Sequence record: NC_070963.1
DNA: 64,000 nt
Reading direction: 5' to 3' (one strand)
Shown here: positions 12,792-33,676 of the stretch, in pieces
Layout of the letters: each line of letters begins with the position of its first letter
Numbering within the stretch: position 1 is the first letter of the stretch
Notes under the pieces: generated by a model
The model's database searches: none
The model's input: only the letters and a program-made list of their open reading frames with translations
Told to the model about the DNA's origin: nothing
Position numbers and translations under genes: made by a program

Positions 12792-12873
12792 TTTCCCAGA
12801 TCGGGTAAAAAATTTTCCGGTAAAATTTTCCACGCGATGGTTTTTAAAAAAGTAGCGTACTGATACAATTTTA

Positions 12874-12887
12874 GTATCGGTTGCTAC
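12874..12887. promoter_or_regulatory. putative NtcA binding site
   Basis: GTATCGGTTGCTAC = GTA-N8-TAC consensus, upstream of -10-like hexamers TATGAT (12899) and TAATAT (12904). Confidence 0.5.
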
Positions 12888-12917
12888 TTTTTAAGTTTTA
12901 TGATAATATATACATTA

Positions 12918-12959
12918 CGTTCATCTGAAAATCAGACGGAAGTACGCCGACTCGGAACG
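12918..12959 (+). ncRNA. glutamine riboswitch-like (glnA-motif-like) aptamer 1
   Basis: CGTTC..GAACG outer stem, TCTGA/TCAGA inner stem, CGGAAGTA junction as in glnA RNAs. Confidence 0.6.
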
Positions 12960-12963
12960 AAGT

Positions 12964-13132
12964 CGTTCATCTATGGAAACACTTCTTTTAACCTGTCTTC
13001 AAGCACAATTCTTAATTAAAAGAATTGAAATGACTCATTTAACTCCCAGAGAAAAGAATGATTTGATTTGGGAAGTTAAGCAGATAAGTCGAAAAGAGTG
13101 TAAAATAGACGCAAAAGCCGACGGAAGGAACG
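12964..13132 (+). ncRNA. glutamine riboswitch-like aptamer 2 with large P2 insertion
   Basis: CGTTCA-TCTAT ... ATAGA-CGCAAAAG-CCG/CGG-AAG-GAACG; same architecture as aptamer 1 but the P2 loop holds about 130 nt. Confidence 0.5.
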
Positions 13133-13140
13133 CTCTTTAA
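12973..13140 (+). CDS. 55 aa hypothetical protein nested in aptamer 2
   Basis: Hand translation METLLLTCLQAQFLIKRIEMTHLTPREKNDLIWEVKQISRKECKIDAKADGRNAL. Confidence 0.55.
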   Translation: METLLLTCLQAQFLIKRIEMTHLTPREKNDLIWEVKQISRKECKIDAKADGRNAL

Positions 13141-13163
13141 CTTAAAAATTAAGGAGAAACCTA

Positions 13164-13301
13164 ATGTCACAAGTCGTTTATAGAGGTGTCCCATATGACA
13201 CCGAACACCGCCGCCAAGCACAACAACAGGTGCAACAACAACCCCAACAATACAACGAAACATATCGTGGAGTTAAGTTTGTAAAGGGGGCAGAAAAATG
13301 A
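13164..13301 (+). CDS. DUF4278-family small protein, Gln-rich
   Basis: MSQVVYRGVPYDT...TYRGVKF (two YRGV motifs); AAGGAG RBS. Confidence 0.75.
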   Translation: MSQVVYRGVPYDTEHRRQAQQQVQQQPQQYNETYRGVKFVKGAEK

Positions 13302-13399
13302 ATACTTATTTTGTTCTTTATTTAAAGAAAAAAGCAAAAAGAGAAAAGTTTCTTAAAATCGCACAACTGAATATGGCAAAGCAACCACAAGTTGCTTAA
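13298..13399 (+). CDS. 33 aa basic peptide
   Basis: ATGA overlap with the DUF4278 stop; MNTYFVLYLKKKAKREKFLKIAQLNMAKQPQVA; ends just before the terminator. Confidence 0.45.
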   Translation: MNTYFVLYLKKKAKREKFLKIAQLNMAKQPQVA

Positions 13400-13402
13400 T
13401 CT

Positions 13403-13431
13403 AAAGGAGGGTTGATTCCCTCCTTTTTTTA
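13403..13431 (+). terminator. intrinsic terminator
   Basis: GGAGGG/CCCTCC stem followed by a T run. Confidence 0.8.
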
Positions 13432-13461
13432 TGATAAAATACCTGAAGAGTACAATACCCG

Positions 13462-14564: not shown

Positions 14565-15116
14565 ATGGAGTATTATACTTATGCATATCTAAGAAAAGAT
14601 AAAACTCCTTGGTATATTGGTAAAGGAACTGGTAGGAGAGCATATCAAAAACACGATTTTTTTAATTGCCCATCAAAAGAAAGAATACTTATTTTAAAAA
14701 AGAATCTTACAGAACAGGAGGCATATAAACACGAAATTTATATGATTTCTATTTTTGGTAGGAAAGATTTAGGAAATGGTATTCTTCGTAATAGGACTGA
14801 TGGTGGTGATGCTCCTCCTATTTTTAAGAGGCATACTGAAGAATCTAAACAAAAAATACGAAATTCTTGTAAAGGTAGAATTTTAGGTCCTGGTATGAGT
14901 GTTGAGGCAAGAATAAAAAGATCAGAAAAAAATAAAAAAATGGGTATCAAACCTCCCCTATATACAAAGTCATATAAATTAATTTCTCCAACGGGAGAAA
15001 TATATGAAGGTGAAAACATCAATAAATTTTGTTTATTGAATAACTTAAATCCAGATGCAATTTACAGTATGAGGCGTGGAAAACAAAAACAACATAAGGG
15101 ATGGAGACTAGCATAA
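14565..15116 (+). CDS. GIY-YIG-like homing endonuclease
   Basis: YYTYAYLRKDKTPWYIGKG, EA..HE, LRNRTDGG; C-terminal KQHKGW motif. Confidence 0.8.
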   Translation: MEYYTYAYLRKDKTPWYIGKGTGRRAYQKHDFFNCPSKERILILKKNLTEQEAYKHEIYMISIFGRKDLGNGILRNRTDGGDAPPIFKRHTEESKQKIRNSCKGRILGPGMSVEARIKRSEKNKKMGIKPPLYTKSYKLISPTGEIYEGENINKFCLLNNLNPDAIYSMRRGKQKQHKGWRLA

Positions 15117-33078: not shown

Positions 33079-33498
33079 ATGATTATCTGTAAATCCTGCG
33101 GTAAAGAAGTTGAACAGCACCAGAGAAAAGGTGGAAGATCAAAACTTTATTGCAACGAAACTTGCCGAATGAAATGGAGATACAGAAACGATCCTTCTGT
33201 TATGAATAGGAACACTTACACGGAACAAAAAGAAAGAGCTTACTCTAATAAGTGGAAAGCACTTCAATATAAAGGTGGTAAGTGTCAAAAATGTGGTGAA
33301 GATAGACCTGCAACTCTATGCTTTCATCACAGAGATCCATCCCAAAAAGAACTAAAACTTGACGGGAGATCCTTTGCTAATAGAAAATGGGAAACAATCA
33401 AAGAAGAAGTTGATAAATGCGATCTTCTTTGCCACAACTGCCATCATATGCTACACTATGGAGATAGTTGGGGTGAGTTCCTACAAACGCTGGTTTAG
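33079..33498 (+). CDS. HNH endonuclease in tRNA cluster
   Basis: CxxC zinc motifs, CQKCG, LCFHHRDP, CDLLCHNCH. Confidence 0.8.
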   Translation: MIICKSCGKEVEQHQRKGGRSKLYCNETCRMKWRYRNDPSVMNRNTYTEQKERAYSNKWKALQYKGGKCQKCGEDRPATLCFHHRDPSQKELKLDGRSFANRKWETIKEEVDKCDLLCHNCHHMLHYGDSWGEFLQTLV

Positions 33499-33561
33499 CT
33501 CTCTGGCGAAAGCACTGCCCTCATAAGGCAAGACAGGTCGGTTCGATCCCGACAACCAGCA
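33489..33561 (+). tRNA. tRNA-Met/Ile2 (CAU)
   Basis: GCTGGTT/AACCAGC acceptor, TGCC-CTCATAA-GGCA anticodon arm, GTCGG-TTCGATC-CCGAC T-arm. Confidence 0.85.
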
Positions 33562-33603: not shown

Positions 33604-33676
33604 GCCCGTGTAGTCCAGCGGAAGAGACAGAGGACTTAAAATCCTTCCAGGGTCGGTTCGAATCCGACCACGGGCA
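33604..33676 (+). tRNA. tRNA-Leu (UAA) with short variable loop
   Basis: GCCCGTG/CACGGGC acceptor, GAGGA-CTTAAAA-TCCTT anticodon arm, GTCGG-TTCGAAT-CCGAC T-arm; 73 nt. Confidence 0.85.

What the first reader, a model, noticed from the sequence alone, without database searches (positions are those of the whole stretch)
12850..13431. Phage nitrogen-sensing unit: NtcA box, tandem glutamine-riboswitch-like RNAs and a Gln-rich DUF4278 peptide
Seen: a perfect GTA-N8-TAC site (12874-12887) in an inverted repeat just upstream of -10-like hexamers. It is followed by two glnA-like RNA folds, a DUF4278-type ORF containing QAQQQVQQQPQQ, a 33 aa basic peptide and a terminator. Established: in Synechocystis the GS-inactivating factor gene gifB is repressed by NtcA and activated by a glutamine riboswitch, and glnA-class riboswitches often precede DUF4278 genes. 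Inference: the phage reads host N status at two levels, possibly to modulate glutamine synthetase or lysis timing. The Gln run could add translational Gln sensing.
Basis: partly seen in the sequence, partly recalled or inferred. Interest (0 to 1): 0.68.

Follow-up and report, generated by a model that had tools for sequence, protein, structure and literature searches.

The report
Cyanophage nested glutamine riboswitch operon
A freshwater cyanophage carries a small nitrogen-sensing cassette: an NtcA-type operator, then a glutamine riboswitch built as one aptamer inside another with a protein gene lodged in its loop, then two tiny peptides of the family that includes a glutamine-synthetase inhibitor; the kind of switch is known, but this architecture is not described in the papers I could search.

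Summary
The window is Synechococcus phage S-SRM01. Comparison with more than 240 related viral contigs and 43 cyanophage isolates shows they form one conserved cassette.

Two points change. First, the "two tandem aptamers" are not side by side. Each half lacks part of the type-I consensus. Covariation supports a nested fold: an outer P1 (12918-22 with 13128-32), a G:C linchpin, loop E, and a long-range 8-bp P3 (12945-52 with 13116-23). That P3 encloses an inner CGUUC/GAACG module. Second, the inner P2 loop holds a real 55-aa gene (12973-13140, dN/dS about 0.26). Its start sits in the stem base and its stop lies in the anti-SD strand.

The box occurs in 85 of 94 distinct upstream regions (0.026 expected per region). 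In S-SRM01 it covers the -35 element, which suggests gifB-like repression, though the polarity is unproven.

Glutamine binding, NtcA binding, glutamine synthetase as target and lysis timing are all untested. The Gln run is not conserved across the peptide family.

Verdict: a known kind of switch (cyanophage glnA riboswitch with DUF4278 cargo) in a new structural variant.

The parts
12847..12892 (+). Strong hairpin followed by a U run: terminator-like end of the upstream operon. Its 3' arm carries the NtcA box and the -35 element.
   Evidence: -22.3 kcal/mol, z -7.9. One search lists it as terminator-like; the 3' arm is invariant in 5 related loci while the 5' arm varies.
12874..12887 (.). GTA-N8-TAC, an NtcA-type box (GTATCGGTTGCTAC)
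   Evidence: Homologous boxes occur in 85 of 94 distinct upstream regions against 0.026 expected, with GTA and TAC invariant and N8 variable.
12881..12909 (+). Predicted sigma-70-type promoter: -35 TTGCTA (12881-86), 17-nt spacer, TG-extended -10 TGATAATAT (12901-09). The predicted start is about 12916.
   Evidence: Read from the sequence. TGn-TAATAT is kept in 4 of 5 loci of the S-SRM01 subgroup. There are no transcript data.
12918..12922 (+). Outer P1, 5' strand (CGUUC). It pairs with 13128-13132.
12924..12936 (+). Outer P2 hairpin (UCUGA-AAA-UCAGA)
   Evidence: three stem pairs show 2, 21 and 17 double compensatory changes among 37 homologues.
12937..12944 (+). CGGAAGUA: the ACG core, linchpin G12939 (pairs C13133) and the loop-E 5' strand AGUA
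   Evidence: consensus; the linchpin is G:C in 43 of 43; it is C:G in marine relatives.
12945..12952 (+). P3 5' strand (CGCCGACU). It pairs with 13116-13123.
   Evidence: compensatory changes at several pairs. S-SRM01 has C-G where most relatives have A-U.
12955..12968 (+). Inner P1 hairpin: GAACG, loop AAGU, CGUUC
12970..13109 (+). Inner P2, closed by UCUAU/AUAGA (12970-74 with 13105-09). Its expanded loop carries the nested ORF.
12973..13140 (+). Nested ORF, 55 aa (GenBank QPX47982, hypothetical). Cys8 and Cys43 are invariant and the predicted fold is a helical hairpin. The stop UAA lies inside the anti-SD strand.
   Evidence: intact in 45 of 45 loci, with indels in multiples of three; dN/dS 0.26; 113 clusters; pLDDT 76.
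13109..13112 (+). Inner ACG-C core
   Evidence: the C pairs with the first linker base, G:C in 38 and C:G in 1. In S-SRM01 that linker base is A, a mismatch.
13116..13123 (+). P3 3' strand (AGCCGACG)
13124..13132 (+). GAAG (loop-E 3' strand) followed by GAACG (outer P1, 3' strand)
13133..13156 (+). Expression platform: anti-SD CUCUUUAA (13133-40, starting with linchpin C13133) paired with UUAAGGAG (13149-56, containing the SD)
   Evidence: -6.2 kcal/mol. It is conserved in alignment A1 and analogous to the gifB model.
13164..13301 (+). DUF4278 peptide, 45 aa, with two YRG motifs joined by a Gln-rich linker
   Evidence: (phrog_5049, E 7e-14).
13298..13399 (+). 33-aa basic helical peptide, translationally coupled through an ATGA overlap
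   Evidence: 70 representative clusters. It is fused to DUF4278 motifs in either order in other sequences.
13403..13432 (+). Intrinsic terminator of the cassette
   Evidence: 9 bp, 5 of them G-C, followed by U7.: -14.5 kcal/mol, z -3.5.

Best explanation
The region 12847-13432 is a self-contained nitrogen-status cassette that cyanomyoviruses share. A sigma-70-type promoter, whose -35 lies inside an NtcA-type box, drives a leader RNA of about 250 nt.

The leader is a type-I (glnA) glutamine riboswitch in a nested form. The outer aptamer uses CGUUC 12918-22 with GAACG 13128-32 as P1. It also has P2 (12924-36), the core CGGAAGUA...GAAG (loop E), a G12939:C13133 linchpin, and a long-range P3 (12945-52 with 13116-23). 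The P3 loop contains a second, inner core: a GAACG-loop-CGUUC hairpin, an inner P2, and ACGC.

By analogy with gifB, glutamine binding locks the outer P1 and the linchpin. That pulls C13133 out of the anti-SD/SD hairpin and frees the SD. The DUF4278 peptide is then translated and, through the ATGA overlap, the 33-aa basic peptide as well.

The inner P2 loop carries a real 55-aa gene. Its AUG lies in the stem base, and its stop lies in the anti-SD strand. Translation of this gene and folding of the aptamer therefore exclude each other.

Shown here: the elements, their conservation, the covariation and the coding signal. Inferred: glutamine binding, the ON direction, NtcA binding and its polarity (I favour repression at N limitation), and the peptides' target.
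For: Identity and context.

Riboswitch:
- RF01739 hits the first half at 28.9 bits. Homologous halves score 33-36 bits.
- A single-aptamer relative, L344, has a plain P3 hairpin made of the same two strands and passes the gathering score at 42.7 bits.

Nested fold:
- The cross linchpin is G:C in 43 of 43 units. The tandem-model linchpins pair in only 2 of 43 and 1 of 43.
- The cross linchpin switches to C:G in marine phages.
- P3 covaries. Pair 8 is G-C in 24, U-A in 18, and A-U in S-SSM7-type units. Pair 1 is A-U or C-G. The strands AGUCG/CGACU, AGUCA/UGACU and AAACGAC/GUUGUUU also occur.
- The nested topology has lower energy in 43 of 43 units and in S-SRM01 itself, -60.8 against -55.1 kcal/mol.
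- Canonical tandem doublets from SAR86-type genomes have two complete aptamers of 57-64 bits each.

Other elements:
- P2 covariation.
- Anti-SD hairpin: with the gifB model.
- Nested ORF.
- Cargo.
- NtcA box.
- Published precedent for NtcA plus riboswitch plus DUF4278.
Against: - No hit in the window reaches Rfam's gathering score.
- The unconstrained minimum-energy fold does not form the outer P1.
- P3 keeps two conserved A.C mismatches.
- The inner linchpin is mismatched in S-SRM01 (C.A), so a second ligand site is doubtful in this phage.
- The box-to-(-10) spacing is 16 nt, not the canonical 20-23 nt of NtcA-activated promoters, and no transcription start site is known.
- No reads could be obtained.
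- Ribosomes on the nested ORF would open the SD regardless of glutamine, which could blunt the switch.
- P1 never varies, so it gives no covariation evidence either way.
Confidence: 0.7

Rival explanations
1. Two independent type-I aptamers stand in tandem, each with its own P1 (12918-22 with 12955-59, and 12964-68 with 13128-32), and give a pseudo-cooperative response.
For: - The Rfam model aligns each half with a local P1.
- S-CREM1 is annotated in this way.
- Tandem glutamine doublets are common (Sherlock 2022; Weinberg 2010).
- All four P1 strands are identical, so both topologies can pair.
- In marine relatives the linchpins fit both models.
Against: - Half 1 lacks GAAG and half 2 lacks GGAAGUA.
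- The tandem linchpins pair in only 2 of 43 and 1 of 43 units.
- P3 covariation links the two halves.
- The halves score about 33 bits, against 57-64 bits for true tandem aptamers.
- There is no expression platform between the halves; the linker is 3-4 nt.
- The tandem topology has higher energy.
Confidence: 0.12
2. NtcA activates the cassette rather than repressing it. It would then be expressed at N stress, as proposed for cyanophage NtcA promoters in general, and glutamine would add a second, opposing gate.
For: - Sullivan 2010 proposes that cyanophages exploit NtcA-driven promoters.
- NtcA-activated promoters carry the box over the -35 region (Klahn 2018).
- In short-form relatives the box lies 22-23 nt before a TAN3T-like TACGTT.
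Against: - That hexamer is the 5' end of the aptamer, so such a start would delete P1.
- The S-SRM01 box centre is about -35.5 relative to the predicted start, not -41.5.
- A good -35/TG-extended -10 promoter overlaps the box.
- The cellular counterparts (gifB, Prochlorococcus PMM1846) are NtcA-repressed.
Confidence: 0.25
3. In S-SRM01 the GTA-N8-TAC is only a by-product of the terminator hairpin and the -35 element. It is not a protein-binding site.
For: - The pattern is common (16 per 64 kb).
- It lies inside a strong hairpin.
- Its spacing differs by 6 nt from the short-form relatives.
Against: - 85 of 94 homologous promoters carry a box, with invariant half-sites and 47 different N8 sequences.
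- In the S-SRM01 subgroup the box-bearing arm is invariant while the other arm varies.
Confidence: 0.1
4. The RNA is a relic or a purely structural leader that no longer senses glutamine. The conservation would then reflect the overlapping coding sequence and mRNA stability.
For: - The Rfam score is below threshold.
- The 3' core doubles as codons IDAKAD of the nested ORF.
- Some relatives lost the first half to a nuclease-gene insertion (L109 and L022).
Against: - The core nucleotides are invariant over hundreds of contigs, including those without any nested ORF.
- In S-SRM01 the RNA pairing (C-G in P3) was kept at the cost of the ORF's usual stop codon.
- Covariation is RNA-like.
Confidence: 0.06

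Closest known systems
Glutamine-I (glnA RNA) riboswitch, Rfam RF01739; structure by Ren et al. 2015 as cited in Klahn 2018 and Huang 2019
   Same: The P1 sequence is CGUUC/GAACG. P2 directly follows CGUUCA. The ACG core, the AGUA/GAA loop E flanking P3, the linchpin pair next to P1 and an anti-SD strand that begins at the linchpin C are all present.
   Different: P3 is not a small hairpin. It is a long-range 8-bp helix whose loop holds a second CGUUC/GAACG/ACG core. The P2 loops can hold whole genes. The Rfam model therefore sees only sub-threshold halves.
Canonical tandem glutamine-I doublets (Weinberg 2010; Sherlock 2022: 157 doublets, classed as pseudo-cooperative)
   Same: There are two CGUUC...GAACG units in one leader before one small gene.
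   Different: In true doublets, such as the SAR86-type loci L142 and L161, each unit is complete and scores 57-64 bits. In the phage unit the consensus is split between the halves, and covariation links them.
gifB (IF17) control in Synechocystis: NtcA repression plus a glutamine-riboswitch ON switch (Klahn 2018)
   Same: An NtcA box sits at the promoter, a type-I aptamer lies in the 5' UTR, the linchpin C and its neighbours mask the ribosome-binding site, and the cargo carries DUF4278.
   Different: The unit is phage-borne. The cargo is only 45 aa, corresponding to the N-terminal, non-inhibitory part of IF17, plus a separate 33-aa basic peptide. The aptamer is nested and contains an ORF.
Glutamine-II (Downstream-peptide, RF01704) with IF17-like DUF4278 genes of Prochlorococcus (Yfr6, PMM1846)
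   Same: The cargo is a short DUF4278 peptide with an NtcA motif at the promoter. The inner module and the marine relatives use the type-II polarity of the linchpin, ACG-C with GAACG-G.
   Different: There is no P2/pseudoknot arrangement of type II. RF01704 gives only 10-17 bits.
Glycine riboswitch (dual aptamer, one expression platform)
   Same: If both cores bind ligand, two sites for the same ligand act on one platform.
   Different: The glycine aptamers are adjacent and dock through tertiary contacts, whereas here one core sits inside a helix of the other. This is a functional analogy only and was not tested.
glnA riboswitch annotated in cyanophage S-CREM1 (Zhang et al. 2023) and listed for other cyanophages
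   Same: It is the homologous element, 93% identical over the compact unit.
   Different: It is described there only as an Rfam hit. That paper mentions no NtcA and, in the passages retrieved on riboswitch and glnA, no nested fold or nested ORF. The S-SRM01 genome paper mentions no riboswitch, NtcA or nitrogen at all.

Membership tests
Glutamine-I riboswitch (RF01739) | Score at or above Rfam's gathering threshold (35 bits) | tested here: not met
   12916-12967 scores 28.9 bits and there is no hit at gathering level. The model cannot span the 180-nt P3 insert. The single-aptamer relative L344 scores 42.7 bits.
Glutamine-I riboswitch (RF01739) | P1 CGUUC/GAACG with P2 directly after CGUUCA | tested here: met
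   P2 shows compensatory changes at 3 pairs. P1 is invariant.
Glutamine-I riboswitch (RF01739) | Loop E (AGUA / GAA) flanking P3 | tested here: met
   This is met only in the nested reading: AGUA 12941-44 and GAAG 13124-27 flank P3 (12945-52 with 13116-23). P3 covaries.
Glutamine-I riboswitch (RF01739) | Long-range Watson-Crick linchpin (G23-C60 of Ren 2015) | tested here: met
   G12939:C13133. The pair is G:C in 43 of 43 freshwater units and C:G in marine units.
Glutamine-I riboswitch (RF01739) | Selective binding of L-glutamine | not testable with these tools
   This needs in-line probing or ITC.
Glutamine-II riboswitch (RF01704) | Covariance-model match and the P2/pseudoknot layout | tested here: not met
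   relatives score at most 16.8 bits at this locus, and S-SRM01 has no hit here.
DUF4278 (PF14105), the IF17 N-terminal domain | Pfam score at or above the 25.3-bit cut-off | tested here: inconclusive
   The window protein scores 20.4 bits, E 6.7e-4. In its family 37 of 39 members hit, best E 3.6e-8. The YRG..Y..T and YRG motifs are invariant.
GS-inactivating factors IF7/IF17 | IF7-like C-terminal module with the arginines needed for glutamine synthetase binding | not tested
   No IF7 or IF17 sequence was available through the tools. There was no hit in Pfam, NCBIfam or PDB for the basic peptide. The HMM search found no long IF17-like protein. Only the two-module layout is shared.
NtcA-regulated promoter | GTA-N8-TAC palindrome conserved at the promoter | tested here: met
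NtcA-regulated promoter | Canonical activator geometry (box, then 20-23 nt, then TAN3T; centre -41.5) | tested here: not met
   The spacing to TAATAT is 16 nt, giving a centre of about -35.5 from the predicted start. In relatives the box lies 13 nt before a TA(T/A)ATA element.
NtcA-regulated promoter | NtcA binding and 2-oxoglutarate dependence | not testable with these tools
   This needs an EMSA or footprint.
Intrinsic terminator | G+C-rich hairpin followed by a U run | tested here: met
   13403-13426 plus U7.

The most novel reading that the evidence does not exclude
The leader is a two-output toggle with two glutamine sites.
- At high glutamine, the nested double aptamer folds. It hides the start codon of the gene lodged in its inner P2 loop and frees the SD of the DUF4278 and basic-peptide pair.
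- At low glutamine, ribosomes enter the lodged gene and unzip the aptamer. They end in or next to the anti-SD strand.

In this way one RNA would choose between protein products. This 'gene inside an aptamer' design would then be the normal state of the glutamine riboswitch in T4-like cyanophages, including P-HM1, P-SSM2, S-SSM7 and others.
Probability: 0.3. Interest if true: 0.88.

Novelty: new variant of a known kind. Interest (0 to 1): 0.74.

Why it matters
Glutamine riboswitches in cyanophages, NtcA boxes in cyanophages and the link between riboswitch and DUF4278 are each known. The following were not found in the papers I could search.
1. What is annotated as tandem glnA aptamers in cyanomyoviruses is one aptamer nested in the P3 of another. 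That would be a dual-core, single-platform layout for this riboswitch class.
2. The variable loops of a metabolite aptamer host conserved protein genes, with start and stop codons interlocked with the aptamer core. In S-SRM01 an RNA-pairing change even displaced the stop codon.
3. The NtcA box is a near-constant partner of this riboswitch.

The element occurs in laboratory phage-host pairs such as P-HM1/P-HM2 with MED4, S-PM2 with WH7803 and P-SSM2 with NATL1A. How a phage reads host glutamine and 2-oxoglutarate, and what the three tiny proteins do, is therefore directly testable. The result also explains why covariance models score these phage elements just below threshold.

Tried and rejected
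- No whole genome is held for the window. The phage records were searched instead.
- The strict scan of cellular genomes returned nothing, but the result is void. I wrote 10 N where the unit has 9, and 0 of 121 phage loci match that pattern. Absence from cellular genomes is therefore NOT shown.
It yielded only 7 true canonical doublets, which I used as controls.
There are no expression or transcription-start data, and read laying was not used.
- A common origin for the two nested-ORF families (inner P2 and outer P2) is not supported: hhalign probability 0.5%.
- The nested ORF has no Pfam or NCBIfam hit, only a weak phrog_504 match, no Atlas hit and no PDB fold match with E below 5.
- The basic peptide has no Pfam, NCBIfam or PDB match.
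- Ames and Breaker 2011 is not held, so their description of tandem glnA RNAs could not be read.
- A recurring second 'box', GTAGATGTTTATAC, about 100 nt upstream in many relatives lies inside the upstream gene's coding sequence (speD in S-PM2) and was dismissed.
- Complex prediction with glutamine synthetase was not run. No host glutamine synthetase is available, IF-GS pairing is species-specific, and a negative result would say nothing.
Full report
IDENTITY AND CONTEXT

The window is bases 1-64000 of Synechococcus phage S-SRM01 (MW015081), a freshwater T4-like cyanomyovirus from Singapore; the match is 100%. GenBank annotates only hypothetical proteins at 12973-13140, 13164-13301 and 13298-13399. 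The genome paper mentions no riboswitch, NtcA, glutamine or nitrogen. The flanking genes are DUF6433 and phrog_485 genes upstream, and small phage ORFs and thyX downstream.

CHECK OF THE OBSERVATION

- GTATCGGTTGCTAC is at 12874-12887.
- It lies in the 3' arm of a very stable hairpin, 12847-12892 (-22.3 kcal/mol, z -7.9). A U run follows, so the hairpin looks like the terminator of the upstream operon.
- Downstream comes TGATAATAT (12901-09).
- Rfam finds nothing but two tRNAs at gathering level.
- In a local search RF01739 (glutamine aptamer) matches 12916-12967 at 28.9 bits, below the threshold of 35, with E 4e-4.
- The 45-aa ORF matches DUF4278 weakly on its own, but 37 of 39 relatives match, best E 3.6e-8.
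- The 33-aa ORF overlaps the DUF4278 stop by ATGA.
- A clean terminator follows at 13403-13426 plus U7.

COMPARATIVE MATERIAL

- The 3' end of the RNA plus the anti-SD strand occurs in at least 120 IMG/VR contigs.
- A marine variant occurs in at least 120 more.
- The compact unit matches 43 cyanophage isolates and nothing else in the phage collection. These include S-PM2, P-SSM2, P-SSM4, P-HM1, P-HM2, S-SSM7 and S-CREM1.
- S-CREM1 is the only record that annotates it, as 'glnA riboswitch'.

THE RNA IS NESTED, NOT TANDEM

The type-I consensus is CGUUCA, P2, aCGGAAGUA, P3, GAAGGAACGC. In the phage unit the first half has CGGAAGUA but no GAAG. The second half has GAAGGAACGC, but ACGCAAA stands where CGGAAGUA should be.

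The linchpin is the pair equivalent to G23-C60 in the solved structure. That pair is needed for the ligand-bound fold (Klahn 2018 citing Ren 2015; Huang 2019). Read as tandem, the linchpins are G.G (or G.A) and C.C. They pair in only 2 of 43 and 1 of 43 compact units. Read crosswise, the picture changes:
- ACG-G of half 1 pairs with the C after GAACG of half 2 in 43 of 43 units.
- ACG-C of half 2 pairs with the first linker base after GAACG of half 1 in 39 of 43 units, including one C:G swap.
- In marine phages the outer pair is C:G instead of G:C. This is a double change at exactly these two distant positions.

The 8 nt after GGAAGUA pair with the 8 nt before GAAGG, and this helix shows compensatory changes:
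- Pair 8 is G-C in 24 units, U-A in 18, and A-U in the S-SSM7 type.
- Pair 1 is A-U in most units and C-G in S-SRM01, L057 and L066.
- The strand pairs AGUCG/CGACU (57 loci), AGUCA/UGACU, AGACAAC/GUUGACU and AAACGAC/GUUGUUU also occur.

In the single-aptamer relative L344 these same strands form an ordinary P3 hairpin, and that RNA passes Rfam at 42.7 bits. The composite unit is therefore a type-I aptamer whose P3 loop has received a second core: GAACG, linker, CGUUC, inner P2, ACGC.

Further support comes from energies and controls:
- The nested topology has lower energy in 43 of 43 compact units, mean -26.1 against -23.1 kcal/mol.
- In S-SRM01 it is -60.8 against -55.1 kcal/mol.
- True tandem doublets from SAR86-type genomes have two complete aptamers of 57-64 bits each, while the phage halves reach only about 33 bits.
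- The review of tandem riboswitches lists glutamine doublets as separate pseudo-cooperative units and does not use the word 'nested'.

Caveats: P1 never varies. P3 keeps two conserved A.C mismatches. The free-energy minimum without ligand pairs the 5' CGUUC with GGAAGUA instead. In S-SRM01 the inner linchpin is C.A.

EXPRESSION PLATFORM

C13133 (the linchpin) through A13140 pairs with UUAAGGAG at 13149-56, which contains the SD. This matches the arrangement proposed for gifB, where glutamine binding melts the helix below P1 and allows initiation. The riboswitch classes were shown to act as ON switches in vivo. I infer an ON switch here.

A GENE INSIDE THE APTAMER

In S-SRM01, DSL-LC02, DSL-LC03 and 42 other freshwater contigs, the inner P2 loop is expanded to about 140 nt and holds an intact ORF of 50-55 aa.
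- The ORF lengths (50-55 aa) and the spacings of 160, 163, 166 and 169 nt differ by whole codons.
- Third codon positions vary most, and the median dN/dS is 0.26 over 746 pairs.
- 113 protein clusters exist.
- Cys8 and Cys43 are invariant.
- AlphaFold gives a helical hairpin with pLDDT 76, with no informative fold or family match.
- Across 135 loci with an expanded loop, 129 keep an ORF that starts 9-11 nt after the C of CGUUC.
- In most of them the ORF stops at the UGA formed by the last P3 base plus the GA of GAAGG.
- The last six codons (IDAKAD) are the aptamer core itself.
- In S-SRM01 the P3 pair changed from A-U to C-G. This destroyed that UGA, and the ORF runs on to the UAA inside the anti-SD strand.

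The RNA constraint and the coding constraint are thus visibly superimposed. Another first-stage note on this same stretch (s1-414016) had flagged an ORF nested in a riboswitch-like aptamer, and my tests agree with it. Because the AUG lies in the P2 stem base next to the inner P1, and the stop lies in the core or the anti-SD strand, translation and aptamer folding must compete. The regulatory outcome is open.

CARGO

The first ORF after the SD is nearly always a DUF4278 peptide with two YRG motifs. The linker between them is Gln-rich, or of the type KEEY..WYS.THAPAHP, or of the type RPNQTFK.EPHVEI. The Gln run is therefore not a conserved feature.

The second ORF is a basic helix of 27-34 aa with the consensus NWL.LIK.Q..KE..L..AQL.MA. 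A profile search finds 70 representative clusters of small proteins. The helix is fused to DUF4278 motifs at either end in several sequences, and in one of these DUF4278 scores above the Pfam cut-off. In many marine units the helix is the only cargo. The two peptides are thus modules of one system.

DUF4278 is the N-terminal part of IF17, which is dispensable for inhibition. The inhibitory part is the basic, IF7-like C-terminus. The two-module layout is suggestive of IF17, but I could not test homology of the basic helix to IF7.

NtcA BOX

- A GTA-N8-TAC lies within 85 nt upstream of the aptamer in 85 of 94 distinct regions, against 0.026 expected per region from the same contigs. There are 47 different N8 sequences, and many are of the TGTA-N8-TACA type.
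- In most relatives the box is 13 nt upstream of a TA(T/A)ATA element. A subset has an extra covarying hairpin between this element and the aptamer.
- In the S-SRM01 subgroup the box-bearing arm of the terminator hairpin is invariant while the other arm varies. The box encloses a -35-like TTGCTA that lies 17 nt before TG-TAATAT.
- With a start near 12916, the box centre is about -35.5. This is not the activating position of -41.5.
- The cellular counterparts, gifB and Prochlorococcus PMM1846, are NtcA-repressed.
- Cyanophage NtcA sites have, however, been proposed to drive phage genes.
- My odds are repression about 0.5, activation about 0.25, and no or other role for the rest.

VERDICT

The cassette is real and conserved. 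The element as a kind is already known in cyanophages. The new findings are the nested double-core architecture and the genes lodged in the aptamer loops.

Glutamine binding, NtcA binding, the direction of both controls and the targets of the three peptides remain to be shown. 

Noticed in passing
L012:5043-5246, L041:698-901, L064:4965-5168 (related viral contigs); P-HM1 PHM1_179 (L259:166-369): In many relatives the OUTER P2 loop also holds a gene. It encodes 66-69 aa with a signal-peptide-like N-terminus (MTKALLLLAWVPLLS...) and two invariant Cys, with dN/dS 0.31. Some contigs carry genes in both loops. hhalign finds no similarity to the inner-loop protein.
   Followed up: partly
Upstream of the aptamer in 'long-form' relatives, e.g. 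L010, L041, L064: A 5-bp hairpin with covarying stems (AGGTC/GACCT, AGAGG/CCTCT, GGGG/CCCC and others) and a TATAAT loop sits directly 5' of the aptamer. The loop, together with an upstream TTGAC(T), also reads as a perfect sigma-70 promoter. It is unclear whether the hairpin acts in RNA or in DNA.
   Followed up: no
L109 and L022: A homing-endonuclease-like ORF ends exactly where the first half of the riboswitch should be. Only the second CGUUC half and the cargo remain.
   Followed up: no
L142, L161, L180, L186, L192, L198, L206: SAR86 and other gammaproteobacterial MAGs carry canonical tandem glutamine-I doublets (57-64 bits each where scanned) before small ORFs. The anti-SD design resembles the phage one.
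   Followed up: partly
window 14565-15116: This 183-aa ORF next to thyX has a GIY-YIG-like N-terminus (Y.GKG...R) and is probably a homing endonuclease.
   Followed up: no
window 33489-33561 and 33604-33676: Two tRNA genes, scoring 46 and 56 bits in Rfam.
   Followed up: no
L374:1-133 (minus strand): A manA RNA (RF01745, 105 bits) lies on the same marine cyanophage contig as the riboswitch unit.
   Followed up: no
window 13412-13440: A promoter-like site, TTGATT-17-TAAAAT with TG, overlaps the cassette's terminator. It probably restarts transcription for 13462 onward.
   Followed up: no
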